From contig NW_027362765.1 in the NCBI RefSeq assembly GCF_046119375.1, positions 223,510,001-223,574,000 on the forward strand: a DNA stretch of 64,000 nt, read 5' to 3'. How positions within the stretch are numbered: the first letter of the stretch is position 1; every line of letters begins with the position of its first letter. Positions 17,757 to 64,000 of this stretch are shown piece after piece. This DNA is from Phyllobates terribilis (Eukaryota). The position numbers were made by a program, and so were the translations under genes. The notes below the pieces were generated by a model. That model did no database searches. It was given only the letters and a program-made list of their open reading frames with translations, and was not told the origin of the DNA.

Positions 17757-17831
17757 TAGGGATGAGCGAACCCAAACTGTAAAGTTCGGGGTTCGTACCG
17801 GACACCTGGTGATTTTTTTCTGGATGTCCGG
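17757..17831 (+). mobile_element. hAT-like left-end fragment (TAGGGATGAGCGAACC) interrupted by a solo LTR
   Basis: Same terminus type as 6179 and 43216, with gttcg motifs; resumes for ~12 bp (tttactgttcg) after the LTR TSD. Confidence 0.6.
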
Positions 17832-21699: not shown

Positions 21700-21715
21700 T
21701 CCGGTTTACTGTTCG

Positions 21716-33807: not shown

Positions 33808-33809
33808 GT

Positions 33810-33819
33810 TTGCTCGGGC
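33810..33819 (+). other. Primer-binding site, self-priming type (TTGCTCGGGC)
   Basis: Starts 3 nt after the LTR end; perfect reverse complement of GCCCGAGCAA at 32917-32926; lacks the TGG start of a tRNA-type PBS. Confidence 0.8.
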
Positions 33820-33820
33820 C

Positions 33821-34771: not shown

Positions 34772-34813
34772 GTTCGCTCAGAGAGGTCGACCTAGACAAG
34801 AATAAATCCTCTC
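34753..34813 (+). promoter_or_regulatory. -1 ribosomal frameshift signal: G_GGA_AAC plus downstream stem/pseudoknot
   Basis: Heptamer is in the gag frame; 5-nt spacer; 9-bp stem tgtctaggt/acctagaca; -1 frame is open into pol. Confidence 0.85.
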
Positions 34814-38178: not shown

Positions 38179-39145
38179 AGGGGCCGCGCGCGCCGTCCTA
38201 AGGAGTCCCCGGCCAATGGCCGGAGGACTTCACCATATATAAGGCACCTCCTCCAAAATGGAGGTGCCCGAGCAATGTTGTTGCACTGTTCACTACTCTG
38301 CTTCAGCCCTCAGGTCCCGTTGCCAGTTACCTGCCAGATTCCTGCCAGATTCCTGCCTGATTATCTGCTACCTGCCTGCTAGTCTGAGGTCCGACGGTCT
38401 GCCTTCCAACTCCTGTCAGTCTGTCTATGGACCAGCTTGCCTGCTCACCTGGGAGCACACACCTGTTACCTGCCTGCTAGCCTACCTGGAGGCTCCGCCG
38501 TCACGTGCTGTGACCACCTGCCTGTCCAGTGACTCCTGCCCGCTCACCTGGGAGCGCTCATCTGCTGCCTGTCTGCTAGCCTACCTGGAGGCTCTGCCGT
38601 CACGTGCTGTGACCACCCGCCTGTCCAGAGACTTCTGCCCGCTCACCTGGGAGCGCTCATCTGCCGCCTGTCTGTTGGTCTTCCTGGAGGCTCCGCCGTC
38701 ACATGCTGTGACCATCCGTTCATCCAGAGACTCTCGCCTGCTCACCTGGGAGCTCACGTCTATCATCAGCAGCCACAGGTCGTACCAACCCTTTACCCAG
38801 AGACTGCCCCGGTCACTTGCCGTGACCATCTGCCCGTTCATCCAGAGACTGCCCCGGTCACTTGCCGTGACCATCTGCCCGTTCATTCAGAGACTGCCCC
38901 GGTCACTTGCCGTGACCATCTGCCCGTTCATTCAGAGACTGCCCCGGTCACTTGCCGTAACCATCTGCCCGTTCATCCAGAGACTGCCCTGGTCACTTGC
39001 CGTGACCTCCAGCCCGTTCACTCAGAGACTGTCCCGGTCACCTGCTGTGACTTCCTGCCCGTCTTCCCTGGTCGCCACCCGCTCCCTTACAAGGACCGCC
39101 CCCTTGTATAGTAGCTCAGAGGTTCCGCCTCCCAGACCCGTTACA
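38022..39145 (+). repeat. 3' LTR (1124 bp)
   Basis: Differs from the 5' LTR by an 11-bp indel, a 4-bp (GC)n indel and about six substitutions seen by eye. Confidence 0.97.
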
Positions 39146-39176
39146 CTGGTGTTGTGCATTATACTTTATGTAGGCT

Positions 39177-39240
39177 ACAGTGGGTACGAAAAGTATTCAG
39201 ACCCCTTTAAATTTTTACTCTTTGTTTCATTGCAGCCAAT
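39177..39240 (+). mobile_element. Tc1 terminal fragment
   Basis: ta-cagtgggtacgaaaagtattcagaccccttta, a Tc1-type TIR start. Confidence 0.6.
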
Positions 39241-39499
39241 GAATTCCCAGATTTTTCTGGGAATTCAAATTGATAAGGCTATTCAGTTCCTTATCAACAG
39301 GACGCAACCTAACACCTGGATTTATGACTCACTACATGGACACAATTCATACCTCCAGATAACTAAACATCCCCACTGCATCTCCACTTGCAACAAAAAA
39401 AAAACTAATTTGATCTCCTTGACTTATCAGTAGGAAGCATCACCCCCTCCACCTCATGAACAAATGTCATACTGTAACATCTCTTAAATGTTGTGCATT

Positions 39500-42869: not shown

Positions 42870-43215
42870 TGTCACCCCAGGCCTGGATGGCACAAATATT
42901 AAAGGCTGTGTCTGAGAGCAGGAGGGAGGTTCCCTGGTCAGGGACAATTAGCATACAGCACCTCCTGTCCCAGGCCAGTAGGGGGAGCTGGCTGCCCCTA
43001 TAAAAGCTGGTACTGGGGGCAGGGTTAGAGAGAACTGGACGACCTAGCTCAGGACTGAGACTAGTCCCAGAGAAGGAGGGACAGTTCAGCTGCAGCCGAG
43101 GAGTCCGTGAGGCAGAGGAGAAGCTGCGAGCCAGGGACAGAGGTGACGAGAGCCGGTCCTGGCTGAGAGAACTACACTACCGGACATTGGGGTCCGAGGC
43201 TGTGAGGGTTGCAAG
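42870..43215 (+). mobile_element. LTR 5' portion interrupted by the hAT element
   Basis: Starts TGTCAC; TATAAAA at 42999-43005; sequence switches abruptly at 43216. Confidence 0.55.
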
Positions 43216-43590
43216 TAGAGATGAGCGTTGTTCGACTCGAACTGTTCGCCAATCTCAAATTCGAGCTGTTTTGGGCGGTGTTCGAGCCGTTCGGCGAACA
43301 CGAACGATTTGAGAAAAATTCGGCTGTTCGAGGTTATGTTCGATAACTGTTCGTGCACCAAAATCATAACTGGATTTTTTCTCAGTAATGATGAAAATTA
43401 ATGTTAACACGCAGTTTGAGTGTACAGCGGGGTGGGGGGAGGGGCAGGGGATGGATCTCTGCAGGAATAATGAAGATCTCCATTTTTTTTCTCTTTCCCG
43501 CATTTACAGTGGGGAGGTGCAATCTGTCAGCCTATCAGCAGCGCACACACGGAGCGAAGTGCTTTTTTTCACACAAGCAAGGGCATGTGT

Positions 43591-43660
43591 CATTGGCAGT
43601 GTATGTCACATGTCCTTGCCCTATAAGACCAAGCCATTTTCCCCGTCGCCACCATTTTCT
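43591..43660 (+). promoter_or_regulatory. Putative Pol II promoter of the hAT element
   Basis: Reverse CCAAT (cattgg, 43591), TATAAG at 43622, two CCATTTT (YY1-like) motifs just downstream; motif-level evidence only. Confidence 0.4.
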
Positions 43661-44130
43661 CACTGCTGCAGCTGCGTGTTAGACGGCACCGCTGTTGCTG
43701 TGTGCGCTATACCTTGTTAATTTCAAGCCAATTTTCGCACAAATCTACAGATAGCTTGGGAGTAGGGAATAGTTGTGATTGCAGTCCTTTTAAGGACTAG
43801 GTTACAGCATTTCCTACGACTTTTATCAGGCAGGTCTGTGCTCTTAAATAGATAGATTGTGGGAGTAAAGACTAATTGTAATTGCAGTCCTTTTCAGGAC
43901 TAGGTTACATCAGTTCCTATCAGTTTTTGCCAGGCAGGTCTGTGCCAGTGCTGTGCAAGTTTTTTTCACAGCATTTGGCTGAATCTAGCAAAGCTAATCC
44001 TTTTTGGCCTATTGCAGAGTGTGTTAGTCAGTGGAGTAGCCTATCTGTGTTGCAAGATATACCACCTGTGTATAGAATACCAATTTTTTTACTGCACCTA
44101 GTGAAGTAAAATCTTTTGGGCATAGCATCA

Positions 44131-47100
44131 TTCTATTAGTCCATCTATACTGACCTCCATCAGGTTGCAAATTGAATATAATTTTTTTCTGCATCTAGCT
44201 CTGAAAAAATATTTGGGCTTCTAGCAGTGTGTGGGACTTGTTCTATTAGTCCATCTATACTGACCTCCATCAGGTTGCAAACTGAATATATTTTTTTCTG
44301 CATCTACCTCTGAAAAAATATTTGGCCTTCTAGCAGTGTGTGGGACTTGTTCTATTAGTCCATCTATACTGACCTCCATCACGCTGCAAATTCAAAATAA
44401 TTTTTTGTCTGCATCTAGCTCTGAAAAAATATTTGACCTTCTAGCAGTGTGTGGGACTTTCTCTATTAGTCCATCTATACTGACCTCCATCAGGTTGCAA
44501 ATTAAAAATAATTTATATCTGCATCTAGCTCTGAAAAAATATTTGGCCTTCTAGCAGTGTGTGGGACTTTCTCTATTAGTCCATCTATACTGACCTCCAT
44601 CAGGCTGCAAATTAAAAATAATTTTTTGTCTGCATCTAGCTCTGAAAAAATATTTGGCCTTCTAGCAGTGTGTGGGACTTTCTCTATTAGTCCATCTATA
44701 CTGACCTCCATCAGGTTGCAAACTGAATATATTTTTTTTCTGCATCTACCTCTGAAAAAATATTGGGCTTCTAGCTGTGTGTGGGACTTGTTCTATTAAT
44801 CCATCTATACAGACCTCCATCAGGTTGCAAACTGAATATAATTTTTTTCTGCATCTACCTCTGAAAAAATATTTGGGCTTCTAGCTGTGTGTGGTACTTG
44901 TTCTATTAATCCATCTATACAGACCTCCATCAGGTTGCAAACTGAATATAATTTTTTTCTGCATCTACCTCTGAAAAAATATTTGGGCTTCTAGCTGTGT
45001 GTGGGACTTGTTCTATTAGTCCATCTATACTGACCTCCATCAGGTTGCAAACTGAATATAATTTTTTTCTGCATCTAGCTCTGAAAAAATATTTGACCTT
45101 CTAGCAGTGTGTGGGACTTTCTCTATTAGTCCATCTATACTGACCTCCATCAGGCTGCAAATTAAAAATAATTTTTATCTGCATCTAGCTCTGAAAAAAT
45201 ATTTGGCCTTCTAGCAGTGTGTGGGACTTTCTCTATTAGTCCATCTATACTGACCTCCATCAGGTTGCAAATTAAAAATAATTTTTTGTCTGCATCTAGC
45301 TCTGAAAAAATATTTGGCCTTCTAGCAATGTGTGGGACTTTCTCTATTAGTCCATCTATACTGACCTCCATCAGGTTGCAAATTCAAAATAATTTTTTGT
45401 CTGCATCTAGCTCTGAAAAAATATTTGGCCTTCTAGCAGTGTGTGGGACTTTCTCTATTAGTCCATCTATACTGACCTCCATCAGGCTGCAAATTAAAAA
45501 TAATTTTTATCTGCATCTACCTCTGAAAAAATATTTGGGCTTCTAGCTGTGTGTGGGACTTGTTCTATTAGTCCATCTATACTGACCTCCATCAGGTTGC
45601 AAACTGAATATAATTTTTTTCTGCATCTAGCTCTGAAAAAATATTTGACCTTCTAGCAGTGTGTGGGACTTTCTCTATTAGTCCATCTATACTGACCTCC
45701 ATCAGGCTGCAAATTAAAAATAATTTTTATCTGCATCTAGCTCTGAAAAAATATTTGGCCTTCTAGCAGTGTGTGGGACTTTCTCTATTAGTCCATCTAT
45801 ACTGACCTCCATCAGGTTGCAAACTGAATATATTTTTTTTCTGCATCTACCTCTGAAAAAATATTGGGCTTCTAGCTGTGTGTGGGACTTGTTCTATTAA
45901 TCCATCTATACAGACCTCCATCAGGTTGCAAACTGAATATAATTTTTTTCTGCATCTACCTCTGAAAAAATATTTGGGCTTCTAGCTGTGTGTGGTACTT
46001 GTTCTTTTAATCCATCTATACAGACCTCCATCAGGTTGCAAACTGAATATAATTTTTTTCTGCATCTACCTGTGAAAAAATATTTGGGCTTCTAGCTGTG
46101 TGTGGGACTTGTTCTATTAGTCCATCTATACTGACCTCCATCAGGTTGCAAACTGAATATAATTTTTTTCTGCATCTAGCTCTGAAAAAATATTTGACCT
46201 TCTAGCAGTGTGTGGGACTTTCTCTATTAGTCCATCTATACTGACCTCCATCAGGCTGCAAATTAAAAATAATTTTTATCTGCATCTAGCTCTGAAAAAA
46301 TATTTGGCCTTCTAGCAGTGTGTGGGACTTTCTCTATTAGTCCATCTATACTGACCTCCATCAGGTTGCAAATTAAAAATAATTTTTTGTCTGCATCTAG
46401 CTCTGAAAAAATATTTGGCCTTCTAGCAATGTGTGGGACTTTCTCTATTAGTCCATCTATACTGACCTCCATCAGTTTGCAAATTCAAAATAATTTTTTG
46501 TCTGCATCTAGCTCTGAAAAAATATTTGGCCTTCTAGCAGTGTGTGGGACTTTCTCTATTAGTCCATCTATACTGACCTCCATCAGGCTGCAAATTAAAA
46601 ATAATTTTTATCTGCATCTACCTCTGAAAAAATATTTGGCCTTCTAGCTGTGTGTGGGACTTGTTGTATTAGTCCATCTATACTGACCTCCATCAGGTTG
46701 CAAACTGAATATAATTTTTTTCTGCATCTAGCTCTGAAAAAATATTTGGCCTTCTAGCAGTGTGTGGGACTTTCTCTATTAGTCCATCTATACTGACCTC
46801 CATCAGGTTGCAAATTAAAAATAATTTATATCTGCATCTAGCTCTGAAAAAATATTTGGCCTTCTAGCAGTGTGTGGGACTTTCTCTATTAGTCCATCTA
46901 TACTGACCTCCATCAGGTTGCAAATGAAAAATAATTTTTTGTCTGCATCTAGCTCTGAAAAAATATTTGGCCTTCTAGCAGTGTGTGGGACTTTCTCTAT
47001 TAGTCCATCTATACTGACCTCCATCAGGTTGCAAACTGAATATATTTTTTTTCTGCATCTACCTCTGAAAAAATATTTGGGCTTCTAGCTGTTTGTAGGA

Positions 47101-50100
47101 CTTGTTCTATTAGTCCATCTATACTGACCTCCATCAGGTTGCAAACTGAATACAATTTTTTTCTGCATCTACCTCTGAAAAAATATTTGGGTTTCTAGCT
47201 GTGTGTGGGACTTGTTCTATTAGTCCATCTATACTGACCTCCATCAGGTTGCAAACTGAATATAATTTTTTTCTGCATCTAGCTCTGAAAAAATATTTGG
47301 CCTTCTAGCAGTGTGTGGGACTTTCTCTATTAGTCCATCTATACTGACCTCCATCAGGTTGCAAATTAAAAATAATTTTTTGTCTGCATGTAGCTCTGAA
47401 AAAATATTTGGCCTTATAGCAGTGTGTGGGACTTTCTCTATTAGTCCATCTATACTGACCTACATCAGGTTGCAAACTGAATATATTTTTTTTCTGCATC
47501 TACCTCTGAAAAAATATTGGGCTTCTAGCTGTGTGTGGGACTTGTTCTATTAATCCATCTATACAGACCTCCATCAGGTTGCAAACTGAATACAATTTTT
47601 TTCTGCATCTACCTCTGAAAAAATATTTGGGCTTCTAGCTGTGTGTGGTACTTGTTCTATTAATCCATCTATACAGACCTCCATCAGGTTGCAAACTGAA
47701 TATAATTTTTTTCTGCATCTACCTCTGAAAAAATATTTGGGCTTCTAGCTGTGTGTGGGACTTGTTCTATTAGTCCATCTATACTGACCTCCATCAGGTT
47801 GCAAACTGAATATAATTTTTTTCTGCATCTAGCTCTGAAAAAATATTTGGCCTTCTAGCAGTGTGTGGGACTTTCTCTATTAGTCCATCTATACTGACCT
47901 CCATCAGGCTGCAAATTAAAAATAATTTTTATCTGCATCTAGCTCTGAAAAAATATTTGGCCTTCTAGCAGTGTGTGGGACTTTCTCTATTAGTCCATCT
48001 ATACTGACCTCGATCAGGTTGCAAATTAAAAATAATTTTTTGTCTGCATCTAGCTCTGAAAAAATATTTGGCCTTCTAGCAGTGTGTGGGACTTTCTCTA
48101 TTAGTCCATCTATACTGACCTCCATCAGGTTGCAAATTCAAAATAATTTTTTGTCTGCATCTAGCTCTGAAAAAATATTTGGCCTTCTAGCAGTGTGTGG
48201 GACTTTCTCTATTAGTCCATCTATACTGACCTCCATCAGGCTGCAAATTAAAAATAATTTTTATCTGCATCTACCTCTGAAAAAATATTTGGCCTTCTAG
48301 CTGTGTGTGGGACTTGTTCTATTAGTCCATCTATACTGACCTCCATCAGGTTGCAAACTGAATATAATTTTTTTCTGCATCTAGCTGTGAAAAAATATTT
48401 GGCCTTCTAGCAGTGTGTGGGACTTTCTCTATTAGTCCATGTATACTGACCTCCATCAGGTTGCAAATTAAAAATAATTTATATCTGCATCTAGCTCTGA
48501 AAAAATATTTGGCCTTCTAGCAGTGTGTGGGACTTTCTCTATTAGTCCATCTATACTGACCTCCATCAGGTTGCAAATGAAAAATAATTTTTTGTCTGCA
48601 TCTAGCTCTGAAAACATATTTGGCCTTCTAGCAGTGTGTGGGACTTTCTCTATTAGTCCATCTATACTGACCTCCATCAGGTTGCAAACTGAATATATTT
48701 TTTTCTGCATCTACATCTGAAAAAATATTTGGGCTTCTAGCTGTTTGTAGGACTTGTTCTATTAGTCCATCTATACTGACCTCCATCAGGTTGCAAACTG
48801 AATATAATTTTTTTCTGCATCTAGCTCTGAAAAAATATTTGACCTTCTAGCAGTGTGTGGGACTTTCTCTATTAGTCCATCTATACTGACCTCCATCAGG
48901 CTGCAAATTAAAAATAATTTTTATCTGCATCTAGCTCTGAAAAAATATTTGGCCTTCTAGCAGTGTGTGGGACTTTCTCTATTAGTCCATCTATACTGAC
49001 CTCCATCAGGTTGCAAATTAAAAATAATTTTTTGTCTGCATCTAGCTCTGAAAAAATATTTGGCCTTCTAGCAATGTGTGGGACTTTCTCTATTAGTCCA
49101 TCTATACTGACCTCCATCAGGTTGCAAATTCAAAATAATTTTTTGTCTGCATCTAGCTCTGAAAAAATATTTGGCCTTCTAGCAGTGTGTGGGACTTTCT
49201 CTATTAGTCCATCTATACTGACCTCCATCAGGCTACAAATTAAAAATAATTTTTATCTGCATCTACCTCTGAAAAAATATTTGGCCTTCTAGCTGTGTGT
49301 GGGACTTGTTGTATTAGTCCATCTATACTGACCTCCATCAGGTTGCAAACTGAATATAATTTTTTTCTGCATCTAGCTCTGAAAAAATATTTGGCCTTCT
49401 AGCAGTGTGTGGGACTTTCTCTATTAGTCCATCTATACTGACCTCCATCAGGTTGCAAATTAAAAATAATTTATATCTGCATCTAGCTCTGAAAAAATAT
49501 TTGGCCTTCTAGCAGTGTGTGGGACTTTCTCTATTAGTCCATCTATACTGACCTCCATCAGGTTGCAAATGAAAAATAATTTTTTGTCTGCATCTAGCTC
49601 TGAAAAAATATTTGGCCTTCTAGCAGTGTGTGGGACTTTCTCTATTAGTCCATCTATACTGACCTCCATCAGGTTGCAAACTGAATATATTTTTTTTCTG
49701 CATCTACCTCTGAAAAAATATTTGGGCTTCTAGCTGTTTGTAGGACTTGTTCTATTAGTCCATCTATACTGACCTCCATCAGGTTGCAAACTGAATACAA
49801 TTTTTTTCTGCATCTACCTCTGAAAAAATATTTGGGTTTCTAGCTGTGTGTGGGACTTGTTCTATTAGTCCATCTATACTGACCTCCATCAGGTTGCAAA
49901 CTGAATATAATTTTTTTCTGCATCTAGCTCTGAAAAAATATTTGGCCTTCTAGCAGTGTGTGGGACTTTCTCTATTAGTCCATCTATACTGACCTCCATC
50001 AGGTTGCAAATTAAAAATAATTTTTTGTCTGCATGTAGCTCTGAAAAAATATTTGGCCTTATAGCAGTGTGTGGGACTTTCTCTATTAGTCCATCTATAC

Positions 50101-53100
50101 TGACCTACATCAGGTTGCAAACTGAATATATTTTTTTTCTGCATCTACCTCTGAAAAAATATTGGGCTTCTAGCTGTGTGTGGGACTTGTTCTATTAATC
50201 CATCTATACAGACCTCCATCAGGTTGCAAACTGAATACAATTTTTTTCTGCATCTACCTCTGAAAAAATATTTGGGCTTCTAGCTGTGTGTGGTACTTGT
50301 TCTATTAATCCATCTATACAGACCTCCATCAGGTTGCAAACTGAATATAATTTTTTTCTGCATCTACCTCTGAAAAAATATTTGGGCTTCTAGCTGTGTG
50401 TGGGACTTGTTCTATTAGTCCATCTATACTGACCTCCATCAGGTTGCAAACTGAATATAATTTTTTTCTGCATCTAGCTCTGAAAAAATATTTGGCCTTC
50501 TAGCAGTGTGTGGGACTTTCTCTATTAGTCCATCTATACTGACCTCCATCAGGTTGCAAATTAAAAATAATTTATATCTGCATCTAGCTCTGAAAAAATA
50601 TTTGGCCTTCTAGCAGTGTGTGGGACTTTCTCTATTAGTCCATCTATACTGACCTCCATCAGGTTGCAAATGAAAAATAATTTTTTGTCTGCATCTAGCT
50701 CTGAAAACATATTTGGCCTTCTAGCAGTGTGTGGGACTTTCTCTATTAGTCCATCTATACTGACCTCCATCAGGTTGCAAACTGAATATATTTTTTTCTG
50801 CATCTACATCTGAAAAAATATTTGGGCTTCTAGCTGTTTGTAGGACTTGTTCTATTAGTCCATCTATACTGACCTCCATCAGGTTGCAAACTGAATATAA
50901 TTTTTTTCTGCATCTAGCTCTGAAAAAATATTTGACCTTCTAGCAGTGTGTGGGACTTTCTCTATTAGTCCATCTATACTGACCTCCATCAGGCTGCAAA
51001 TTAAAAATAATTTTTATCTGCATCTAGCTCTGAAAAAATATTTGGCCTTCTAGCAGTGTGTGGGACTTTCTCTATTAGTCCATCTATACTGACCTCCATC
51101 AGGTTGCAAATTAAAAATAATTTTTTGTCTGCATCTAGCTCTGAAAAAATATTTGGCCTTCTAGCAATGTGTGGGACTTTCTCTATTAGTCCATCTATAC
51201 TGACCTCCATCAGGTTGCAAATTCAAAATAATTTTTTGTCTGCATCTAGCTCTGAAAAAATATTTGGCCTTCTAGCAGTGTGTGGGACTTTCTCTATTAG
51301 TCCATCTATACTGACCTCCATCAGGCTACAAATTAAAAATAATTTTTATCTGCATCTACCTCTGAAAAAATATTTGGCCTTCTAGCTGTGTGTGGGACTT
51401 GTTGTATTAGTCCATCTATACTGACCTCCATCAGGTTGCAAACTGAATATAATTTTTTTCTGCATCTAGCTCTGAAAAAATATTTGGCCTTCTAGCAGTG
51501 TGTGGGACTTTCTCTATTAGTCCATCTATACTGACCTTCATCAGGTTGCAAATTAAAAATAATTTATATCTGCATCTAGCTCTGAAAAAATATTTGGCCT
51601 TCTAGCAGTGTGTGGGACTTTCTCTATTAGTCCATCTATACTGACCTCCATCAGGTTGCAAATGAAAAATAATTTATTGTCTGCATCTAGCTCTGAAAAA
51701 ATATTTGGCCTTCTAGCAGTGTGTGGGACTTTCTCTATTAGTCCATCTATACTGACCTCCATCAGGTTGCAAACTGAATATATTTTTTTTCTGCATCTAC
51801 CTCTGAAAAAATATTTGGGCTTCTAGCTGTTTGTAGGACTTGTTCTATTAGTCCATCTATACTGACCTCCATCAGGTTGCAAACTGAATACAATTTTTTT
51901 CTGCATCTACCTCTGAAAAAATATTTGGGTTTCTAGCTGTGTGTGGGACTTGTTCTATTAGTCCATCTATACTGACCTCCATCAGGTTGCAAACTGAATA
52001 TAATTTTTTTCTGCATCTAGCTCTGAAAAAATATTTGGCCTTCTAGCAGTGTGTGGGACTTTCTCTATTAGTCCATCTATACTGACCTCCATCAGGTTGC
52101 AAATTAAAAATAATTTTTTGTCTGCATGTAGCTCTGAAAAAATATTTGGCCTTATAGCAGTGTGTGGGACTTTCTCTATTAGTCCATCTATACTGACCTA
52201 CATCAGGTTGCAAACTAAATATATTTTTTTTCTGCATCTACCTCTGAAAAAATATTGGGCTTCTAGCTGTGTGTGGGACTTGTTCTATTAATCCATCTAT
52301 ACAGACCTCCATCAGGTTGCAAACTGAATACAATTTTTTTCTGCATCTACCTCTGAAAAAATATTTGGGCTTCTAGCTGTGTGTGGTACTTGTTCTATTA
52401 ATCCATCTATACAGACCTCCATCAGGTTGCAAACTGAATATAATTTTTTTCTGCATCTACCTCTGAAAAAATATTTGGGCTTCTAGCTGTGTGTGGGACT
52501 TGTTCTATTAGTCCATCTATACTGACCTCCATCAGGTTGCAAACTGAATATAATTTTTTTCTGCATCTAGCTCTGAAAAAATATTTGGCCTTCTAGCAGT
52601 GTGTGGGACTTTCTCTATTAGTCCATCTATACTGACCTCCATCAGGCTGCAAATTAAAAATAATTTTTATCTGCATCTAGCTCTGAAAAAATATTTGGCC
52701 TTCTAGCAGTGTGTGGGACTTTCTCTATTAGTCCATCTATACTGACCTCGATCAGGTTGCAAATTAAAAATAATTTTTTGTCTGCATCTAGCTCTGAAAA
52801 AATATTTGGCCTTCTAGCAGTGTGTGGGACTTTCTCTATTAGTCCATCTATACTGACCTCCATCAGGTTGCAAATTCAAAATAATTTTTTGTCTGCATCT
52901 AGCTCTGAAAAAATATTTGGCCTTCTAGCAGTGTGTGGGACTTTCTCTATTAGTCCATCTATACTGACCTCCATCAGGCTGCAAATTAAAAATAATTTTT
53001 ATCTGCATCTACCTCTGAAAAAATATTTGGCCTTCTAGCTGTGTGTGGGACTTGTTCTATTAGTCCATCTATACTGACCTCCATCAGGTTGCAAACTGAA

Positions 53101-56100
53101 TATAATTTTTTTCTGCATCTAGCTCTGAAAAAATATTTGGCCTTCTAGCAGTGTGTGGGACTTTCTCTATTAGTCCATCTATACTGACCTCCATCAGGTT
53201 GCAAATTAAAAATAATTTTTTGTCTGCATGTAGCTCTGAAAAAATATTTGGCCTTATAGCAGTGTGTGGGACTTTCTCTATTAGTCCATCTATACTGACC
53301 TACATCAGGTTGCAAACTGAATATATTTTTTTTCTGCATCTACCTCTGAAAAAATATTGGGCTTCTAGCTGTGTGTGGGACTTGTTCTATTAATCCATCT
53401 ATACAGACCTCCATCAGGTTGCAAACTGAATACAATTTTTTTCTGCATCTACCTCTGAAAAAATATTTGGGCTTCTAGCTGTGTGTGGTACTTGTTCTAT
53501 TAATCCATCTATACAGACCTCCATCAGGTTGCAAACTGAATATAATTTTTTTCTGCATCTACCTCTGAAAAAATATTTGGGCTTCTAGCTGTGTGTGGGA
53601 CTTGTTCTATTAGTCCATCTATACTGACCTCCATCAGGTTGCAAACTGAATATAATTTTTTTCTGCATCTAGCTCTGAAAAAATATTTGGCCTTCTAGCA
53701 GTGTGTGGGACTTTCTCTATTAGTCCATCTATACTGACCTCCATCAGGTTGCAAATTAAAAATAATTTATATCTGCATCTAGCTCTGAAAAAATATTTGG
53801 CCTTCTAGCAGTGTGTGGGACTTTCTCTATTAGTCCATCTATACTGACCTCCATCAGGTTGCAAATGAAAAATAATTTTTTGTCTGCATCTAGCTCTGAA
53901 AACATATTTGGCCTTCTAGCAGTGTGTGGGACTTTCTCTATTAGTCCATCTATACTGACCTCCATCAGGTTGCAAACTGAATATATTTTTTTCTGCATCT
54001 ACATCTGAAAAAATATTTGGGCTTCTAGCTGTTTGTAGGACTTGTTCTATTAGTCCATCTATACTGACCTCCATCAGGTTGCAAACTGAATATAATTTTT
54101 TTCTGCATCTAGCTCTGAAAAAATATTTGACCTTCTAGCAGTGTGTGGGACTTTCTCTATTAGTCCATCTATACTGACCTCCATCAGGCTGCAAATTAAA
54201 AATAATTTTTATCTGCATCTAGCTCTGAAAAAATATTTGGCCTTCTAGCAGTGTGTGGGACTTTCTCTATTAGTCCATCTATACTGACCTCCATCAGGTT
54301 GCAAATTAAAAATAATTTTTTGTCTGCATCTAGCTCTGAAAAAATATTTGGCCTTCTAGCAATGTGTGGGACTTTCTCTATTAGTCCATCTATACTGACC
54401 TCCATCAGGTTGCAAATTCAAAATAATTTTTTGTCTGCATCTAGCTCTGAAAAAATATTTGGCCTTCTAGCAGTGTGTGGGACTTTCTCTATTAGTCCAT
54501 CTATACTGACCTCCATCAGGCTACAAATTAAAAATAATTTTTATCTGCATCTACCTCTGAAAAAATATTTGGCCTTCTAGCTGTGTGTGGGACTTGTTGT
54601 ATTAGTCCATCTATACTGACCTCCATCAGGTTGCAAACTGAATATAATTTTTTTCTGCATCTAGCTCTGAAAAAATATTTGGCCTTCTAGCAGTGTGTGG
54701 GACTTTCTCTATTAGTCCATCTATACTGACCTTCATCAGGTTGCAAATTAAAAATAATTTATATCTGCATCTAGCTCTGAAAAAATATTTGGCCTTCTAG
54801 CAGTGTGTGGGACTTTCTCTATTAGTCCATCTATACTGACCTCCATCAGGTTGCAAATGAAAAATAATTTATTGTCTGCATCTAGCTCTGAAAAAATATT
54901 TGGCCTTCTAGCAGTGTGTGGGACTTTCTCTATTAGTCCATCTATACTGACCTCCATCAGGTTGCAAACTGAATATATTTTTTTTCTGCATCTACCTCTG
55001 AAAAAATATTTGGGCTTCTAGCTGTTTGTAGGACTTGTTCTATTAGTCCATCTATACTGACCTCCATCAGGTTGCAAACTGAATACAATTTTTTTCTGCA
55101 TCTACCTCTGAAAAAATATTTGGGTTTCTAGCTGTGTGTGGGACTTGTTCTATTAGTCCATCTATACTGACCTCCATCAGGTTGCAAACTGAATATAATT
55201 TTTTTCTGCATCTAGCTCTGAAAAAATATTTGGCCTTCTAGCAGTGTGTGGGACTTTCTCTATTAGTCCATCTATACTGACCTCCATCAGGTTGCAAATT
55301 AAAAATAATTTTTTGTCTGCATGTAGCTCTGAAAAAATATTTGGCCTTATAGCAGTGTGTGGGACTTTCTCTATTAGTCCATCTATACTGACCTACATCA
55401 GGTTGCAAACTAAATATATTTTTTTTCTGCATCTACCTCTGAAAAAATATTGGGCTTCTAGCTGTGTGTGGGACTTGTTCTATTAATCCATCTATACAGA
55501 CCTCCATCAGGTTGCAAACTGAATACAATTTTTTTCTGCATCTACCTCTGAAAAAATATTTGGGCTTCTAGCTGTGTGTGGTACTTGTTCTATTAATCCA
55601 TCTATACAGACCTCCATCAGGTTGCAAACTGAATATAATTTTTTTCTGCATCTACCTCTGAAAAAATATTTGGGCTTCTAGCTGTGTGTGGGACTTGTTC
55701 TATTAGTCCATCTATACTGACCTCCATCAGGTTGCAAACTGAATATAATTTTTTTCTGCATCTAGCTCTGAAAAAATATTTGGCCTTCTAGCAGTGTGTG
55801 GGACTTTCTCTATTAGTCCATCTATACTGACCTCCATCAGGCTGCAAATTAAAAATAATTTTTATCTGCATCTAGCTCTGAAAAAATATTTGGCCTTCTA
55901 GCAGTGTGTGGGACTTTCTCTATTAGTCCATCTATACTGACCTCGATCAGGTTGCAAATTAAAAATAATTTTTTGTCTGCATCTAGCTCTGAAAAAATAT
56001 TTGGCCTTCTAGCAGTGTGTGGGACTTTCTCTATTAGTCCATCTATACTGACCTCCATCAGGTTGCAAATTCAAAATAATTTTTTGTCTGCATCTAGCTC

Positions 56101-59100
56101 TGAAAAAATATTTGGCCTTCTAGCAGTGTGTGGGACTTTCTCTATTAGTCCATCTATACTGACCTCCATCAGGCTGCAAATTAAAAATAATTTTTATCTG
56201 CATCTACCTCTGAAAAAATATTTGGCCTTCTAGCTGTGTGTGGGACTTGTTCTATTAGTCCATCTATACTGACCTCCATCAGGTTGCAAACTGAATATAA
56301 TTTTTTTCTGCATCTAGCTCTGAAAAAATATTTGGCCTTCTAGCAGTGTGTGGGACTTTCTCTATTAGTCCATCTATACTGACCTCCATCAGGTTGCAAA
56401 TTAAAAATAATTTATATCTGCATCTAGCTCTGAAAAAATATTTGGCCTTCTAGCAGTGTGTGGGACTTTCTCTATTAGTCCATCTATACTGACCTCCATC
56501 AGGTTGCAAATGAAAAATAATTTTTTGTCTGCATCTAGCTCTGAAAACATATTTGGCCTTCTAGCAGTGTGTGGGACTTTCTCTATTAGTCCATCTATAC
56601 TGACCTCCATCAGGTTGCAAACTGAATATATTTTTTTCTGCATCTACCTCTGAAAAAATATTTGGGCTTCTAGCTGTTTGTAGGACTTGTTCTATTAGTC
56701 CATCTATACTGACCTCCATCAGGTTGCAAACTGAATAAATTTTTTTTCTGCATCTACCTCTGAAAAAATATTTGGGCTTCTAGCTGTGTGTGGGACTTGT
56801 TCTATTAGTCCATCTATACTGACCTCCATCAGGTTGCAAACTGAATATAATTTTTTTCTGCATCTAGCTCTGAAAAAATATTTGGCCTTCTAGCAGTGTG
56901 TGGGACTTTCTCTATTAGTCCATCTATACTGACCTCCATCAGGCTGCAAATTAAAAATAATTTTTATCTGCATCTAGCTCTGAAAAAATATTTGGCCTTC
57001 TAGCAGTGTGTGGGACTTTCTCTATTAGTCCATCTATACTGACCTCCATCAGGTTGCAAATTAAAAATAATTTTTTGTCTGCATCTAGCTCTGAAAAAAT
57101 ATTTGGCCTTCTAGCAATGTGTGGGACTTTCTCTATTAGTCCATCTATACTGACCTCCATCAGGTTGCAAATTCAAAATAATTTTTTGTCTGCATCTAGC
57201 TCTGAAAAAATATTTGGCCTTCTAGCAGTGTGTGGGACTTTCTCTATTAGTCCATCTATACTGACCTCCATCAGGCTGCAAATTAAAAATAATTTTTATC
57301 TGCATCTACCTCTGAAAAAATATTTGGCCTTCTAGCTGTGTGTGGGACTTGTTGTATTAGTCCATCTATACTGACCTCCATCAGGTTGCAAACTGAATAT
57401 AATTTTTTTCTGCATCTAGCTCTGAAAAAATATTTGGCCTTCTAGCAGTGTGTGGGACTTTCTCTATTAGTCCATCTATACTGACCTCCATCAGGTTGCA
57501 AATTAAAAATAATTTATATCTGCATCTAGCTCTGAAAAAATATTTGGCCTTCTAGCAGTGTGTGGGACTTTCTCTATTAGTCCATCTATACTGACCTCCA
57601 TCAGGTTGCAAATGAAAAATAATTTTTTGTCTGCATCTAGCTCTGAAAAAATATTTGGCCTTCTAGCAGTGTGTGGGACTTTCTCTATTAGTCCATCTAT
57701 ACTGACCTCCATCAGGTTGCAAACTGAATATATTTTTTTTCTGCATCTACCTCTGAAAAAATATTTGGGCTTCTAGCTGTTTGTAGGACTTGTTCTATTA
57801 GTCCATCTATACTGACCTCCATCAGGTTGCAAACTGAATACAATTTTTTTCTGCATCTACCTCTGAAAAAATATTTGGGTTTCTAGCTGTGTGTGGGACT
57901 TGTTCTATTAGTCCATCTATACTGACCTCCATCAGGTTGCAAACTGAATATAATTTTTTTCTGCATCTAGCTCTGAAAAAATATTTGGCCTTCTAGCAGT
58001 GTGTGGGACTTTCTCTATTAGTCCATCTATACTGACCTCCATCAGGTTGCAAATTAAAAATAATTTTTTGTCTGCATGTAGCTCTGAAAAAATATTTGGC
58101 CTTATAGCAGTGTGTGGGACTTTCTCTATTAGTCCATCTATACTGACCTACATCAGGTTGCAAACTGAATATATTTTTTTTCTGCATCTACCTCTGAAAA
58201 AATATTGGGCTTCTAGCTGTGTGTGGGACTTGTTCTATTAATCCATCTATACAGACCTCCATCAGGTTGCAAACTGAATACAATTTTTTTCTGCATCTAC
58301 CTCTGAAAAAATATTTGGGCTTCTAGCTGTGTGTGGTACTTGTTCTATTAATCCATCTATACAGACCTCCATCAGGTTGCAAACTGAATATAATTTTTTT
58401 CTGCATCTACCTCTGAAAAAATATTTGGGCTTCTAGCTGTGTGTGGGACTTGTTCTATTAGTCCATCTATACTGACCTCCATCAGGTTGCAAACTGAATA
58501 TAATTTTTTTCTGCATCTAGCTCTGAAAAAATATTTGGCCTTCTAGCAGTGTGTGGGACTTTCTCTATTAGTCCATCTATACTGACCTCCATCAGGCTGC
58601 AAATTAAAAATAATTTTTATCTGCATCTAGCTCTGAAAAAATATTTGGCCTTCTAGCAGTGTGTGGGACTTTCTCTATTAGTCCATCTATACTGACCTCG
58701 ATCAGGTTGCAAATTAAAAATAATTTTTTGTTTGCATCTAGCTCTGAAAAAATATTTGGCCTTCTAGCAGTGTGTGGGACTTTCTCTATTAGTCCATCTA
58801 TACTGACCTCCATCAGGTTGCAAATTCAAAATAATTTTTTGTCTGCATCTAGCTCTGAAAAAATATTTGTCCTTCTAGCAGTGTGTGGGACTTTCTCTAT
58901 TAGTCCATCTATACTGACCTCCATCAGGCTGCAAATTAAAAATAATTTTTATCTGCATCTACCTCTGAAAAAATATTTGGCCTTCTAGCTGTGTGTGGGA
59001 CTTGTTCTATTAGTCCATCTATACTGACCTCCATCAGGTTGCAAACTGAATATAATTTTTTTCTGCATCTAGCTCTGAAAAAATATTTGGCCTTCTAGCA

Positions 59101-60723
59101 GTGTGTGGGACTTTCTCTATTAGTCCATCTATACTGACCTCCATCAGGTTGCAAATTAAAAATAATTTATATCTGCATCTAGCTCTGAAAAAATATTTGG
59201 CCTTCTAGCAGTGTGTGGGACTTTCTCTATTAGTCCATCTATACTGACCTCCATCAGGTTGCAAATGAAAAATAATTTTTTGTCTGCATCTAGCTCTGAA
59301 AACATATTTGGCCTTCTAGCAGTGTGTGGGACTTTCTCTATTAGTCCATCTATACTGACCTCCATCAGGTTGCAAACTGAATATATTTTTTTCTGCATCT
59401 ACCTCTGAAAAAATATTTGGGCTTCTAGCTGTTTGTAGGACTTGTTCTATTAGTCCATCTATACTGACCTCCATCAGGTTGCAAACTGAATAAATTTTTT
59501 TTCTGCATCTACCTCTGAAAAAATATTTGGGCTTCTAGCTGTGTGTGGGACTTGTTCTATTAGTCCATCTATACTGACCTCCATCAGGTTGCAAACTGAA
59601 TATAATTTTTTTCTGCATCTAGCTCTGAAAAAATATTTGGCCTTCTAGCAGTGTGTGGGACTTTCTCTATTAGTCCATCTATACTGACCTCCATCAGGCT
59701 GCAAATTAAAAATAATTTTTATTTGCATCTAGCTCTGAAAAAATATTTGGCCTTCTAGCAGTGTGTGGGACTTTCTCTATTAGTCCATCTATACTGACCT
59801 CCATCAGGTTGCAAATTAAAAATAATTTTTTGTCTGCATCTAGCTCTGAAAAAATATTTGGCCTTCTAGCAGTGTGTTGGACTTTCTCTATTAGTCCATC
59901 TATACTGACCTCCATCAGGTTGCAAATTCAAAATAATTTTTTGTCTGCATCTAGCTCTGAAAAAATATTTGGCCTTCTAGCAGTGTGTGGGACTTTCTCT
60001 ATTAGTCCATCTATACTGACCTCCATCAGGCTGCAAATTAAAAATAATTTTTATCTGCATCTACCTCTGAAAAAATATTTGGCCTTCTAGCTGTGTGTGG
60101 GACTTGTTCTATTAGTCCATCTATACTGACCTCCATCAGGTTGCAAACTGAATATAATTTTTTTCTGCATCTAGCTCTGAAAAAATATTTGGCCTTCTAG
60201 CAGTGTGTGGGACTTTCTCTATTAGTCCATCTATACTGACCTCCATCAGGTTGCAAATGAAAAATAATTTATATCTGCATCTAGCTCTGAAAAAATATTT
60301 GGCCTTCTAGCAGTGTGTGGGACTTTCTCTATTAGTCCATCTATACTGACCTCCATCAGGTTGCAAATGAAAAATAATTTTTTGTCTGCATCTACCTCTG
60401 AAAACATATTTGGCCTTCTAGCAGTGTGTGGGACTTTCTCTATTAGTCCATCTATACTGACCTCCATCAGGTTGCAAACTGAATATATTTTTTTCTGCAT
60501 CTACCTCTGAAAAAATATTTGGGCTTCTAGCTGTTTGTAGGACTTGTTCTATTAGTCCATCTATACTGACCTCCATCAGGTTGCAAACTGAATAAATTTT
60601 TTTTCTGCATCTACCTCTGAAAAAATATTTGGGCTTCTAGCTGTGTGGGGGACTTGTTCTATTAGTCCATCTATACTGACCTCCATCAGGTTGCAAATTG
60701 AATATAATTTTTTTCTGCATCTA
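44131..60723. repeat. 110-bp satellite array, ~150 units, with higher-order repeats
   Basis: Period 110 (44161/44271); diagnostic variants recur at 1101-1102, 2093, 2645, 2755 and 3195 bp. Confidence 0.98.
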
Positions 60724-60839
60724 ACCCAGCCAATAGTTTTGGCCTAATACCACAGTTTGGCCACTCAGCTCTGCTCGGTTCCCATCCATTGTTTTTTTGT
60801 GCAAACAACTCCAGAGTTGTGAATTAGTTAACCACCAAA

Positions 60840-63800
60840 ATGAGTGGAAAAAGGCCTGCTGCTGGTGGAAAGGGGAATAGACGTGTTGGGAAGGGGAAAA
60901 AAGGTTGTGTCCGTGGGGTAGGTGTTAAAGCAACAGTAACATCTGCAGAAAAAAGACCATCTTCCAGCCAAACTAAAATGTCTACTTCTTTTAGCGGACA
61001 ATGTGATAAGATCCCTTTCTTACGGCCACGCCAATCGCTACAAATTCCAGATGAGGCACAAAAACAGCAGGTGCTTCAACGGATATCAAGTGCTCCTTTA
61101 AGTGGGCTCTCCTCCACATCAACTTCAACATCACAAATACTCAGGTCCTCAAAGGTGTCACCCCAATCGCACTTGCTTCCTCACAGCTCCCAAATCTCCA
61201 GCTGCCCGTCTGAGTATGAGGTAGAACAGATGGTTGAGTCTGCAGAGCTGTTTACTCATACTATAGCCTGGGAATCAGAGGTCGACTCCAGCGCTTCTGT
61301 GAATCCAGACGAGGAAATGATCTGTACTGATGCCCAGAATCTTTATGAGTCGGATCCAGGACCAGACGCAGAAGGTTCTGACCATAATGTAGACCCTCAT
61401 TCCCAAACTGTAACTCCTGTTGGTGGAGACAATGAGGAAGACGATGATGAGACTCAAATACCTGATTGGAGCGACAACTTTAGTTTTTTGTCAGGGCAGG
61501 AACAGGTTGACTCTGAGGACGACGGGTGTGATAACGCACAGGGTGATGATGATGAGGTTGGAGATCCCACTTACTGTCAACCCACAGTCAGCCAAGAGAT
61601 GAGGTCAGCAGAGGAGGTGGAGGAAGATGCTAGTGACGACGAGGTCAGGTTGCGCCTTCCTGGACAGAGACGTAGTACTGGAAGCACGTCAACAACTGCA
61701 TCCTCAAACACAACTCTGCCTCTCACCACAAGTCGTGGTGGCTCTTCAGGTCGCATGGGTGCTAAGCCTTGCATAGCCTGGGCATTTTTTCAGATCGATA
61801 AAGATGACCCAACTCGTGTTATCTGTAACATTTGTCAGCAAAAGCTAAGTAGAGGCCAAAAAATACATAGTTTGAGTACTTCATGCATGAACCAGCACAT
61901 GGACATGAAGCATAAGTTGCAGTGGGAAGCTCAGTGTGCTACAATGCGGCCTAGCCGGCCGGGCCAACCACCGTCTGCCATATCTTGTGCATCCGCGGCC
62001 TCTTCATCCTCTGTGACTGGGGGGACAGCAGTCACACCTGTTTTGGGGCGCAGACCTGCCACCTCTTTACCCGCAACAGCCAGCGTGATTGGCAGGTCAT
62101 CATTTTCTTTGGAGGTGGTAACACCAGCTGGTGTTGAGCGCTGTCCGACATCGATAGCACCACCTTTGGATCAAGGCAACCTAACATGTCCGCCTGCATC
62201 TTCCTCACAGACCGGCAGTTTGCCGGGGACACCCTTATCAACCCCGTCTAAGCACAATAGCCAGCCCTCGGTCCCTCAGATGTGGACAAGTAAAAGACCA
62301 TTTCCTCCTAGCCATGAGAAAGCTAAGAGGTTGAATTTCACCATCTGCAAGCTCTTGGCTACAGAAATGCTGCCTTTCTGCCTGGTGGACACAGAGGATT
62401 TTTGAGACCTTATGTCCGTCGCAGTGCCCCAGTACCAGATGCCCAGTCGGCACTACTTCTCAAAGAAAGGTGTGCCTGCGCTCCACCAGCATGTCGCACA
62501 CAACATCACCGCTTCTTTGAGAAACTCTGTGTGTGACAGGGTGCATTTCACCACAGACACTTGGACGAGTAGGCATGGACAGGGGCGTTACATGTCGCTG
62601 ACTGAGCACTGGGTAACTATGGTGACAGCAGGACAAGGGGCTGCTGTCCAAGTCTTGCCGTCCCCACGAGTTGTGCGTCAATCCTCTTTATGTCAAAGTT
62701 CCTCCACTGCTTCTGCCTCCTCAACCTCCTCTCGGTCTTCCACCTGCACCCAAAGCCTGTCTGGTCATGCCACAAGCTTTCTAACTGCGCAGAAGGGATC
62801 CTGCACACCTCCTTACTATGCTGGCAGTAGGGCTCAACGTCATCAGGCGGTTTTTACTTTGAAATGTCTGGGAAATGTGAGTCACACAGCTGAGGAGTTG
62901 TGGTCAGCTCTGGAGAACCAATTTCATGAATGGTTGTCTCCACTGGATCTGAAACCAGGGAAGGCCGTGTGCGACAATGCTGCAAACCTGGGTGCGGCCC
63001 TTCGCCGGGGCAATGTCACACACGTGCCTTGTATGGCTCACGTGTTGAACCTGGTTGTCCAGCAATTTTTAGCCCACTATCCCAGACTAGATGGCCTTCT
63101 GCAGAGGGCACGGTCGCTGTGTGCTCACTTCCGCCGTTCGCATCCCGCAGCTCAGCTACTTACATCTCTACAGAAGTCGTTGGGCCTGCCACTTCACCGG
63201 CTAAAATGCGATGTACCTACCCGGTGGAATTCAACTCTGCACATGTTGCAGCGACTGTGGCAGCACCGACAAGCCCTGGTGCAATACGTTCTGACATATA
63301 GCCTGGGCCAACGAGATCCAGAGGTGGGGCAAATCACGCTGGAGGAGTGGTCTCAGATCAGGGACCTATGCACCCTTCTGCACAGTTTTGAAATGGCGAC
63401 GAAGATGTTTAGTGCTGACGATGCCATTATCAGCATGACTATTCCGGTGATTTACATGCTGGAGCACATGTTAAACAGAATTCGGAGTCAGGTGGTGGCA
63501 CAAGAGGAGGTGGAGGAAGTAGAGGAGGAGGAGTTGTATGCGGAAGGGCTAACATCTGCAAGGTCCAGACGGTCGGCAGCACCAAGGCGGCAGGCATGTG
63601 AGGGTGGGGGAGATGGTTTTACCAGGGCGCATGGTAGCAGCCAAACTAGTGAGGAAGGTGCAGGAGCCCAGGAAGAAGTGGAGGACGAACCGATGGAAGA
63701 CTCATCAGATGAGGGAGACCTTGATCACATTTCTGTTGTGCGAGGTTGGGGGGAGAGGACAGAGGAAGGAAGCATGATTGTTACCTCGCCACCAACACAA

Positions 63801-64000
63801 CAGGGACTTGGTGCTCCTGGATGCGCAACACACATGAGTGCCTTCTTGCTGCACTACCTGCAACATGACCCTCGAATTGTGAGAATTAGAAATAATCCTC
63901 ACTACTGGGTTGCCACACTGTTAGATCCCCGGTACAAAAGTAAATTTGCAGAAATTATTCCTGCCATAGAAAGGGATGCACGCATGCAGGAGTATCAGCA
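60840..64000 (+). pseudogene. hAT (BED zinc finger, ZBED/Ac-like) transposase, >1050 codons, with one in-frame TGA; 3' end beyond the window
   Basis: BED finger W-x-F-F...CNIC...HMDMKH; TGA at 62403-05; the frame is then open to 64000 with HFTTDTW (D at 62556), VCDNA (D at 62973), CMAH, TRWNS, LLDPRYK. Confidence 0.93.

What the first reader, a model, noticed from the sequence alone, without database searches (positions are those of the whole stretch)
43216..64000. Giant hAT transposon carrying a 16.6-kb satellite between its left end and its transposase
The order is: hAT-type terminus with TTCG-rich subterminal region (43216-43380), ~750 bp of unique sequence, ~150 copies of a 110-bp unit, 116 bp, then the transposase ATG. 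Autonomous hAT elements are usually a few kb; this one exceeds 20.8 kb. It looks like a satellite being born inside a transposon that was near-functional. Such an element could disperse arrays when it moves, and the array could tune or silence its own transposase. This is the best candidate in the window for an undescribed transposon-satellite system, and it may be relevant to very large anuran genomes.
Basis: partly seen in the sequence, partly recalled or inferred. Interest (0 to 1): 0.8.

Follow-up and report, generated by a model that had tools for sequence, protein, structure and literature searches.

The report
Satellite array inside frog hAT transposon
A poison-frog-type hAT "cut-and-paste" transposon family normally carries about ten 110-bp repeats between its left end and its transposase gene, and in this slightly damaged copy they have multiplied to about 150 repeats (16.6 kb), a clean but not unprecedented example of a transposon seeding satellite DNA.

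Summary
A 110-bp tandem array (44132-60723, 150.6 copies) lies between a hAT-type terminus (43216, GTTCG-rich subterminal region) and a BED-finger hAT transposase ORF. The ORF starts 116 bp after the array and runs off the window with one in-frame stop.

The reading that this is one element is well supported but not proven, because the right end and target-site duplication lie beyond the window.

Support for one element:
- Contigs from runs labelled as two other organisms begin inside the last monomer and continue into the ORF at about 99.5% identity.
- The junction from the 5' region to the first monomer also recurs in another organism.
- In those runs monomer depth is only about 10-20 times ORF depth, so the repeats travel with the element and are not an independent satellite.
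- About 1.5 degenerate monomers sit directly upstream of the array.

The stop codon is private to this copy. The array has higher-order structure, and multi-kb blocks are 99.2-99.9% identical. This points to recent local amplification by unequal exchange.

Transposon-borne repeats that grow into satellites are already known (Xmix/Xstir, miDNA4, FEDoR, Atenspm/ENSAT1, Ogre/PisTR-A). The scan also noted the same kind of thing on other pieces of this genome (s1-198884, s1-224837).

Verdict: new member of a known kind, moderate interest. Any effect of the array on transposase regulation is untested.

The parts
43208..43215 (+). Putative left copy of the 8-bp target-site duplication, GTTGCAAG
   Evidence: It directly precedes the terminus. 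It fits the Ac-type hAT target pattern nTnnnnAn as I recall it; that pattern is from memory and was not tested. The right-hand copy lies outside the window.
43216..43227 (+). Left terminal inverted-repeat sequence, TAGAGATGAGCG
   Evidence: It is of the YARNG type. Related termini TAGGGATGAGCGAAC occur at 6179 and 17757. There is no inverted mate in the window.
43216..43380 (+). Subterminal region rich in GTTCG/CGAAC motifs, presumed transposase-binding repeats
   Evidence: 7 of the window's 19 GTTCG and 3 of its 15 CGAAC lie within these 165 bp.
43381..43756 (+). 5' non-coding region of the element
   Evidence: Together with the rest of 43216-44131, its 31-letter words are held at 0.99-1.00 by DNA runs of organism A, at 0.84-0.87 by runs labelled as four other organisms, and at 0.74-0.79 by two RNA-type runs.
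43757..43945 (+). Two copies of an unrelated ~103-bp direct repeat
   Evidence: Found by the repeat finder as D1/D2, 84-90% identity. No significant similarity to the 110-bp unit.
43974..44127 (+). About 1.5 degenerate 110-bp monomers abutting the array
   Evidence: Local alignment to a dimer of the consensus scores 31 against 10.7 +/- 2.2 for shuffles, maximum 20.
44132..60723 (+). 110-bp tandem array: 150.6 copies with higher-order structure, nearly free of CpG
   Evidence: Monomers are on average 95.8% identical to the consensus. About 11 recurring monomer types are arranged in recurring blocks. Blocks of 3.4 kb and 4.1 kb are 99.91% and 99.19% identical. There are 5 CpG against 542 expected.
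60724..60839 (+). 116-bp leader between the array and the ATG; residual monomer similarity runs to about 60745
   Evidence: Contigs from organisms D and E run from 60694 across this leader into the ORF.
60840..62402 (+). Transposase ORF, first 521 codons, with the BED zinc finger at residues 313-359 (about 61776-61916)
   Evidence: Nearest proteins come from the dendrobatid frogs Ranitomeya and Phyllobates, at 60-82% identity over the parts they cover.
62403..62405 (+). In-frame TGA stop, private to this copy
   Evidence: At 62403 about 89% of the laid depth in organism A, and all contigs of organisms D and E and of the RNA-type run, read a different letter, which gives a sense codon. The homologue P0001 reads through this place.
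62406..64000 (+). Transposase ORF continued: 531 codons of hAT catalytic core, cut off by the window end
   Evidence: No stop in frame. Hermes transposase alignment E = 3e-7 with CDNAANL, CMAHVLNL and RWNS in register. 5796 relatives in the representative library. The homologue P0016 (70% identity) continues for 182 more residues, including PF05699.

Best explanation
This is one copy of an abundant, young, autonomous-type hAT DNA transposon of dendrobatid (poison) frogs.

Its family architecture is: left terminus, GTTCG-rich subterminal region, about 0.75 kb of 5' non-coding region, a short run (on the order of ten) of diverged 110-bp repeats, a 116-bp leader, then a transposase of about 1,230 aa with a BED finger.

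In this copy the built-in repeat run has been amplified to about 150 monomers (16.6 kb). The amplification went by repeated duplication of multi-monomer blocks, through unequal crossing-over or replication slippage between out-of-register repeats, and produced a higher-order satellite-like array.

The copy itself is disabled by one private stop codon, so if it moves at all it would need transposase from sister copies.

Shown: the anatomy, the hAT identity, the conservation of both array junctions in other organisms' data, the private nature of the stop, and the recent block duplications. Inferred: that the left end and the ORF are ends of a single insertion, that most of the amplification was local, and the recombination mechanism.
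For: 1. Anatomy and hAT identity.

2. The junction from array to ORF is a family feature. A 3,346-nt contig of organism D (17 differences) and a 1,390-nt contig of organism E (11 differences) both begin at 60694, 30 nt inside the last monomer, which is where a 31-mer assembly is expected to break. Both run on into the ORF (table 8).

3. The junction from the 5' region to the array is a family feature. Loose ends of 245 letters in organism D and in the RNA-type run read GTGAAGTAAAATCTTTTGGGCATAGCATCA in front of a monomer. That is the window's 44102-44131, directly before the first monomer.

4. The left end and the ORF start are held by the same set of organisms at similar word shares, 0.84-0.87 and 0.78-0.81.

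5. Monomer depth is about 11-13 times ORF depth in organism D, 10-20 times in E and 5-6 times in A. In D the individual monomer-variant contigs have depth 15.7-39.2 against 15.2 for the ORF, so each variant occurs about once or twice per element.

6. Degenerate monomers flank the array upstream.

7. Recurring blocks of about 8-11 monomer types, and block identities of 99.91% (3.4 kb) and 99.19% (4.1 kb) against about 90-94% between neighbouring monomers.

8. This copy differs from the family majority at 16 or more near-fixed sites in 3.2 kb (about 0.5%), including the stop.
Against: - The right terminus and the second copy of the target-site duplication lie outside the window, so a single insertion event is not demonstrated.
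- No single molecule from another copy was seen to span left end, repeats and ORF. Short-word contigs break in the repeats, and the DNA of the large frog assemblies could not be fetched.
- The depth ratios come from summed contig word depths, which the tool itself warns are not copy numbers.
- Some block pairs are only 98.1% identical. That is more divergence than this copy's own roughly 0.3-0.5% private divergence, so part of the expansion may predate this insertion, or may have come in by exchange with another copy.
- The array length rests on the assembly and was not checked with spanning reads.
Confidence: 0.78

Rival explanations
1. The locus is a composite. The left end with its repeats and the repeats with the ORF come from two different copies of the same family, either neighbouring or nested. 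They were joined by unequal or ectopic recombination through their 110-bp runs, so 43216-64000 is not one transposition unit.
For: Some array blocks differ by 1.9%, more than this copy's private divergence of about 0.3-0.5%, which is what imported blocks would look like. The family is very abundant in organism A, with 133,461 contigs laid, so ectopic partners are plentiful. The right end is unseen.
Against: All 151 monomers share one orientation and form one continuous recurring block pattern, with no foreign sequence or break. Both junctions are the canonical family junctions. Nothing requires two insertions.
Confidence: 0.1
2. The 110-bp unit is an independent genome-wide satellite, and a hAT element, or two fragments of one, merely lies at the borders of one of its arrays.
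For: The array is long, homogenised and has higher-order structure like a classical satellite. In organism A and in the RNA-type run the monomer words are more abundant than the ORF words.
Against: Monomer depth is only about 5-20 times ORF depth, and in organism D each monomer variant has about the ORF's depth. Both junctions are conserved in runs labelled as other organisms. Degenerate monomers form part of the element's 5' region. No monomer occurs elsewhere in the 64-kb window.
Confidence: 0.04
3. The array length is partly an assembly artefact. The true locus has far fewer or a different number of monomers, and near-identical multi-kb blocks were duplicated or mis-joined by the assembler.
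For: Blocks of 3.4 kb at 99.91% identity are the kind of repeat assemblers mishandle.
Against: The blocks are not identical, with 3-67 mismatches, and they form a graded series of divergences, as real successive duplications would. There are no N runs in the window. This rival would change the copy number but not the architecture.
Confidence: 0.08

Closest known systems
Atenspm (En/Spm-like autonomous DNA transposon) and the ENSAT1 satellite of Arabidopsis thaliana (table in PMC9659126)
   Same: An autonomous class II element whose 5' UTR region holds tandem repeats that gave rise to a satellite.
   Different: It belongs to a different superfamily (CACTA, not hAT) and is from a plant. Here the expanded array is still inside an element copy, next to a nearly intact ORF.
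miDNA4 MITE-borne satellite of Xenopus tropicalis, and Xmix MITE / Xstir of Xenopus laevis (PMC9659126)
   Same: These are anuran DNA transposons that carry a tandem-repeat motif internally. The array is amplified, and the element disperses the seeds.
   Different: They are small non-autonomous elements (Tc1/mariner-type or unclassified MITEs) without a transposase gene. Here the carrier is an autonomous-type hAT, and the array lies between the 5' end and the ORF.
FEDoR, a ~3.5-kb non-autonomous element with internal tandem-repeat arrays in Rana temporaria (PMC12054243)
   Same: A frog DNA-transposon-like element bounded by inverted repeats and target-site duplications, with tandem arrays inside.
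   Different: FEDoR has no ORF and no assigned superfamily, and its arrays are short. No sequence relation was tested.
Ogre/PisTR-A and other plant LTR-retrotransposon UTR repeats that became satellites (PMC7004042, PMC9659126)
   Same: A hypervariable tandem-repeat block in a non-coding part of an autonomous element expands into long arrays. The arrays found are a mixture of short ones inside elements and long expanded ones.
   Different: These are class I elements with the repeats in the 3' UTR, and they are from plants.
Earlier notes of this scan on the same genome: s1-198884 (149-bp repeats before a hAT transposase, more than 21 kb) and s1-224837 (110-bp satellite between a hAT 5' end and the transposase)
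   Same: The same architecture in the same genome. The second note appears to describe the same 110-bp family with a much shorter region (4.2 kb).
   Different: They lie on other loci. I could not read their DNA, so the relation is taken from their titles only.

Membership tests
hAT superfamily DNA transposon | Transposase with an RNase-H-like DDE core carrying the hAT signature motifs (first Asp in a D-x-W block, second Asp, C..H, RWNS) | tested here: met
   TTDTWTS, CDNAANL, CMAHVLNL and PTRWNST are present. phmmer to Hermes transposase gives E = 3e-7, with the second Asp, C..H and RWNS aligned. The third catalytic residue lies beyond the window.
hAT superfamily DNA transposon | N-terminal BED-type zinc finger DNA-binding domain | tested here: met
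   PF02892, E = 4.6e-10, 39.8 bits against a cut-off of 20.6, residues 313-359.
hAT superfamily DNA transposon | C-terminal hAT dimerisation domain (PF05699) | not testable with these tools
   The window ends about 180 codons before the expected C-terminus. Relatives do have the domain: P0016 (70% identity over the last 252 residues in the window) and the full-length P0011, P0012 and P0018.
hAT superfamily DNA transposon | Short terminal inverted repeats of the YARNG type at both ends | tested here: inconclusive
   The left end TAGAGATGAGCG fits. No inverted mate is in the window, because the right end lies beyond base 64000.
hAT superfamily DNA transposon | 8-bp target-site duplication | not testable with these tools
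   Only the left candidate GTTGCAAG (43208-43215) is visible. External frog assembly DNA could not be fetched.
Satellite DNA / higher-order tandem array | Long head-to-tail array of a unit of about 100-200 bp, homogenised, with higher-order periodicity | tested here: met
   150.6 copies of 110 bp over 16.6 kb. Monomer types recur in blocks, and multi-kb blocks are 98-99.9% identical against about 90-94% between neighbours.
Satellite DNA / higher-order tandem array | Large arrays at many loci, independent of a carrier element (a classical genome-wide satellite) | tested here: not met
   Monomer:ORF depth is about 5-20. In organism D the variant contigs have depth close to that of the ORF. This is a rough measure.
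Transposon-borne tandem repeats that seed satellites (the kind reviewed in PMC9659126) | The repeat unit is an integral, recurrent part of the element in many copies or species, and is expanded in some copies | tested here: met
   Both array junctions are conserved in runs labelled as other organisms. Degenerate monomers sit in the 5' region. This copy has about 150 monomers against a genome-wide average on the order of ten.

The most novel reading that the evidence does not exclude
The 110-bp repeat block is not just junk that slipped. In this reading it is a conserved working module of this hAT family, kept between the promoter region and the ATG across several frog species, strongly represented in RNA, and acting as a regulatory or small-RNA-producing 5' leader. 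Long versions would still transpose, so the family would act as a mobile seeder of satellite arrays and would contribute measurably to the very large dendrobatid genomes.
Probability: 0.15. Interest if true: 0.65.

Novelty: new member of a known kind. Interest (0 to 1): 0.4.

Why it matters
This locus catches a transposon-to-satellite transition in an unusually readable state. The carrier is still recognisable as a nearly intact autonomous-type hAT, the seed repeats are a conserved part of the family, and the expansion can be dated block by block.

In frogs with genomes of many gigabases this gives a concrete, countable route by which an abundant DNA transposon family can scatter expandable repeat seeds. 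It also gives a natural test of whether a long array upstream of a transposase gene attracts silencing.

It does not reveal a new mechanism.

Tried and rejected
- Fetching homologous loci from other frog assemblies, to see a complete copy with its right end. All five look-ups returned 'no DNA: the sample's file is too large'.
- Looking for the inverted terminus inside the window. There is none on the minus strand.
- Testing whether the ~103-bp repeats at 43757-43945, or the rest of the 5' region, are related to the 110-bp unit. No similarity above shuffles.
- The 116-bp leader shows only marginal similarity to the unit (score 13 against 9.1 +/- 1.7).
- Known RNA families in 43000-45000: no hit.
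- Special secondary structure of a monomer: z = -0.9, nothing.
- A sequence look-up in the scan's earlier notes was blank.
- The loose end at 60714 in the RNA-type run was considered as a splice acceptor that would remove the array. I rejected this: it rests on one contig and there is no AG at the joint.
- An independent genome-wide satellite was considered and rejected on depth ratios and conserved junctions.
Full report
**What is in the sequence**

Tandem Repeats Finder reports a single array at 44132-60723, with period 110, 150.6 copies and 93% matches. A 27-nt anchor finds 151 monomers. All are on the + strand and all lie inside 44138-60690, against zero expected by chance. The window has no N.

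Upstream, TAGAGATGAGCG begins at 43216. The next 165 bp contain 7 of the window's 19 GTTCG and 3 of its 15 CGAAC. That is the look of hAT subterminal binding repeats; this reading is an inference.

Downstream, 116 bp separate the array from an ATG at 60840. The ORF runs 521 codons to a TGA at 62403-62405, and the same frame continues open for 531 codons to the window end.

The one correction concerns the roughly 750 bp called 'unique'. It contains two ~103-bp direct repeats (43757-43945). Directly abutting the array it also holds about 1.5 degenerate 110-bp monomers (43974-44127; score 31 against 10.7 +/- 2.2 in shuffles).

**The protein is a hAT transposase**

- Piece 1 has a BED zinc finger (PF02892, E = 4.6e-10).
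- Piece 2 carries TTDTWTS, CDNAANL, CMAHVLNL and PTRWNST.
- Piece 2 aligns to the Hermes transposase structures at E = 3e-7, with the second catalytic Asp, the C..H pair and RWNS in register.
- An exhaustive HMMER search finds 5,796 relatives.
- The full-length relatives checked have zf-BED plus the hAT dimerisation domain.
- P0016 is 70% identical over the last 252 residues in the window. It goes on for 182 residues that include PF05699. The window therefore lacks about 180 codons and the 3' end of the element.
- The closest named proteins come from the dendrobatid frogs Ranitomeya variabilis, R. imitator and Phyllobates terribilis.

**Does the array belong to the element?**

This is the crux of the finding. 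The right end is outside the window, and the DNA of the large frog assemblies could not be fetched. I therefore used public runs.

The 5' region (43216-44131) and the junction plus ORF start (60724-61640) are held by the same set of organisms. Organism A holds 0.93-1.00 of the words. Runs labelled as other organisms hold 0.78-0.87. The same RNA-type run holds 0.73-0.79.

I laid contigs on 60540-64000, with these results:

- A 3,346-nt contig of organism D (17 differences) and a 1,390-nt contig of organism E (11 differences) both start at 60694. That is 30 nt inside the last monomer, where a 31-mer graph must break, and both run straight into the ORF.
- Loose ends of 245 letters in organism D and in the RNA-type run end in the 30 letters that stand at 44102-44131 of the window, directly before the first monomer.

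Both junctions of the array are therefore features of the family, not of this locus.

Depth over the monomers is about 11-13 times (D), 10-20 times (E) and 5-6 times (A) the depth over the ORF. In D the separate monomer-variant contigs have depth 15.7-39.2 against 15.2 for the ORF. The tool warns that summed word depth is not a copy number, so I take from this only the order of magnitude. A typical element carries about ten monomers, and the unit is not a large independent satellite.

**State and age of this copy**

At 62403 about 89% of the depth in organism A, and all contigs in D, E and the RNA-type run, read another letter that gives a sense codon. The stop is therefore private to this copy, and the homologue P0001 reads through that place.

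At least 16 sites in 3.2 kb show the family majority differing from this copy, about 0.5%. Six of them are at family CpG sites.

The run data also show joints 60734->61751/61762 with short filler. This is the signature of internally deleted derivatives, and they occur in both DNA and RNA-type runs.

**How the array grew**

Monomers are on average 95.8% identical to the consensus, but they fall into about 11 recurring types. The order of types recurs in blocks such as AFBGHAEB, DCCAFBGHAEB and DJAB. Mean identity peaks at lags of 23-24 monomers.

A self-comparison finds:

| Block length | Identity | Offset (monomers) |
|---|---|---|
| 3,420 bp | 99.91% | 29 |
| 4,088 bp | 99.19% | 25 |
| about 2.5-2.6 kb (several) | about 99.1% | various |
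| 3.6-3.75 kb | 98.1% | 72 and 97 |

Neighbouring monomers are only about 90-94% alike. This graded series is what successive duplications of multi-monomer blocks by unequal exchange produce.

A basic block of about 8-11 distinct monomers matches the roughly ten monomers per element inferred from depth. The simplest history is that the element's built-in run was multiplied block-wise.

The youngest duplications are younger than this copy's private divergence and are therefore local. The 98.1% pairs are more diverged than that. Part of the expansion may therefore predate this insertion or have come in by exchange with another copy, and this stays open.

The array is almost free of CpG (5 against 542 expected), whereas the ORF has an observed/expected ratio of 0.48.

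**What it does**

Nothing here shows a function for the array. The monomers contain none of the GTTCG motifs of the subterminal region, match no Rfam family and have no unusual fold.

The one hint comes from the RNA-type run of organism A, where monomer depth is about 70 times ORF depth, against 5-6 times in DNA of the same organism. The library type is guessed and DNA carry-over is possible, so array transcription is a lead and not a result.

**Comparison with what is known**

The review PMC9659126 lists transposon-derived tandem arrays:

- Xmix/Xstir and miDNA4 in Xenopus.
- The 5' UTR of the autonomous En/Spm-like Atenspm, which gave ENSAT1.
- Ogre/PisTR-A.
- Helentron central repeats.
- Tetris.

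PMC12054243 describes FEDoR, a frog element with internal arrays. PMC7004042 shows frequent origin of plant satellites from retrotransposon UTR repeats.

The poison-frog genome papers report abundant hAT elements but mention no satellites or tandem repeats in them (PMC6278860, PMC11152451). My searches found no description of a hAT-borne 5' array in frogs.

The scan itself has notes of the same architecture on other pieces of this genome. One is a 149-bp family that was followed up and judged 'clear but not unprecedented'. Another is a 110-bp case of 4.2 kb. I could not read those loci, so they are leads only.

**Verdict**

- Observation: confirmed.
- Interpretation: partly supported.
- Best explanation: one hAT copy whose family-typical 5' repeat run was locally amplified about 15-fold, confidence about 0.78.
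- Novelty: new member of a known kind.
- Interest: moderate.

Noticed in passing
window 17757-20776: A second hAT-like terminus (TAGGGATGAGCGAAC, also present at 6179) lies about 360 bp upstream of a 2.7-kb minisatellite of 36-bp units (18121-20776, 73.8 copies). No hAT ORF follows it. It may be another case of a hAT end next to an array.
   Followed up: partly
window 12643-15710: A 31-bp unit repeated 98.8 times (3.1 kb, 88% matches). Its context was not examined.
   Followed up: no
window 32926-39433: An LTR retrotransposon of chromovirus type. It has gag and a pol with protease, RT, RNase H, integrase and a chromodomain. The same 99-bp and 45-bp tandem repeats occur in both flanking repeats (33100-33724 and 38438-39062), so tandem repeats inside mobile elements look common in this genome.
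   Followed up: partly
window 16395-16904, 21700-22000, 26184-26708: Tc1/mariner-type transposase fragments (DDE_3 and HTH_Tnp_Tc3_2 hits). The window is a mosaic of mobile elements.
   Followed up: partly
window 60734-61762 (seen in runs X6 and X15): Contigs join 60734 to 61751 or 61762 with 27-38 filler letters, so internally deleted derivatives lacking the first roughly 1 kb of the ORF exist. They are present in both DNA and RNA-type data.
   Followed up: no
window 60694-64000 against runs X31 and X34: Contigs from runs labelled as two other organisms are about 99.2-99.5% identical to this copy over 1.4-3.3 kb. The organisms are coded, so I cannot tell whether this reflects very close species, very recent activity or transfer between species.
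   Followed up: no
window 44132-60723: The array has 5 CpG where 542 are expected, and in the RNA-type run its words are about 70 times as deep as the ORF's, against 5-6 times in DNA. This hints that the array is transcribed, but it is unconfirmed.
   Followed up: partly
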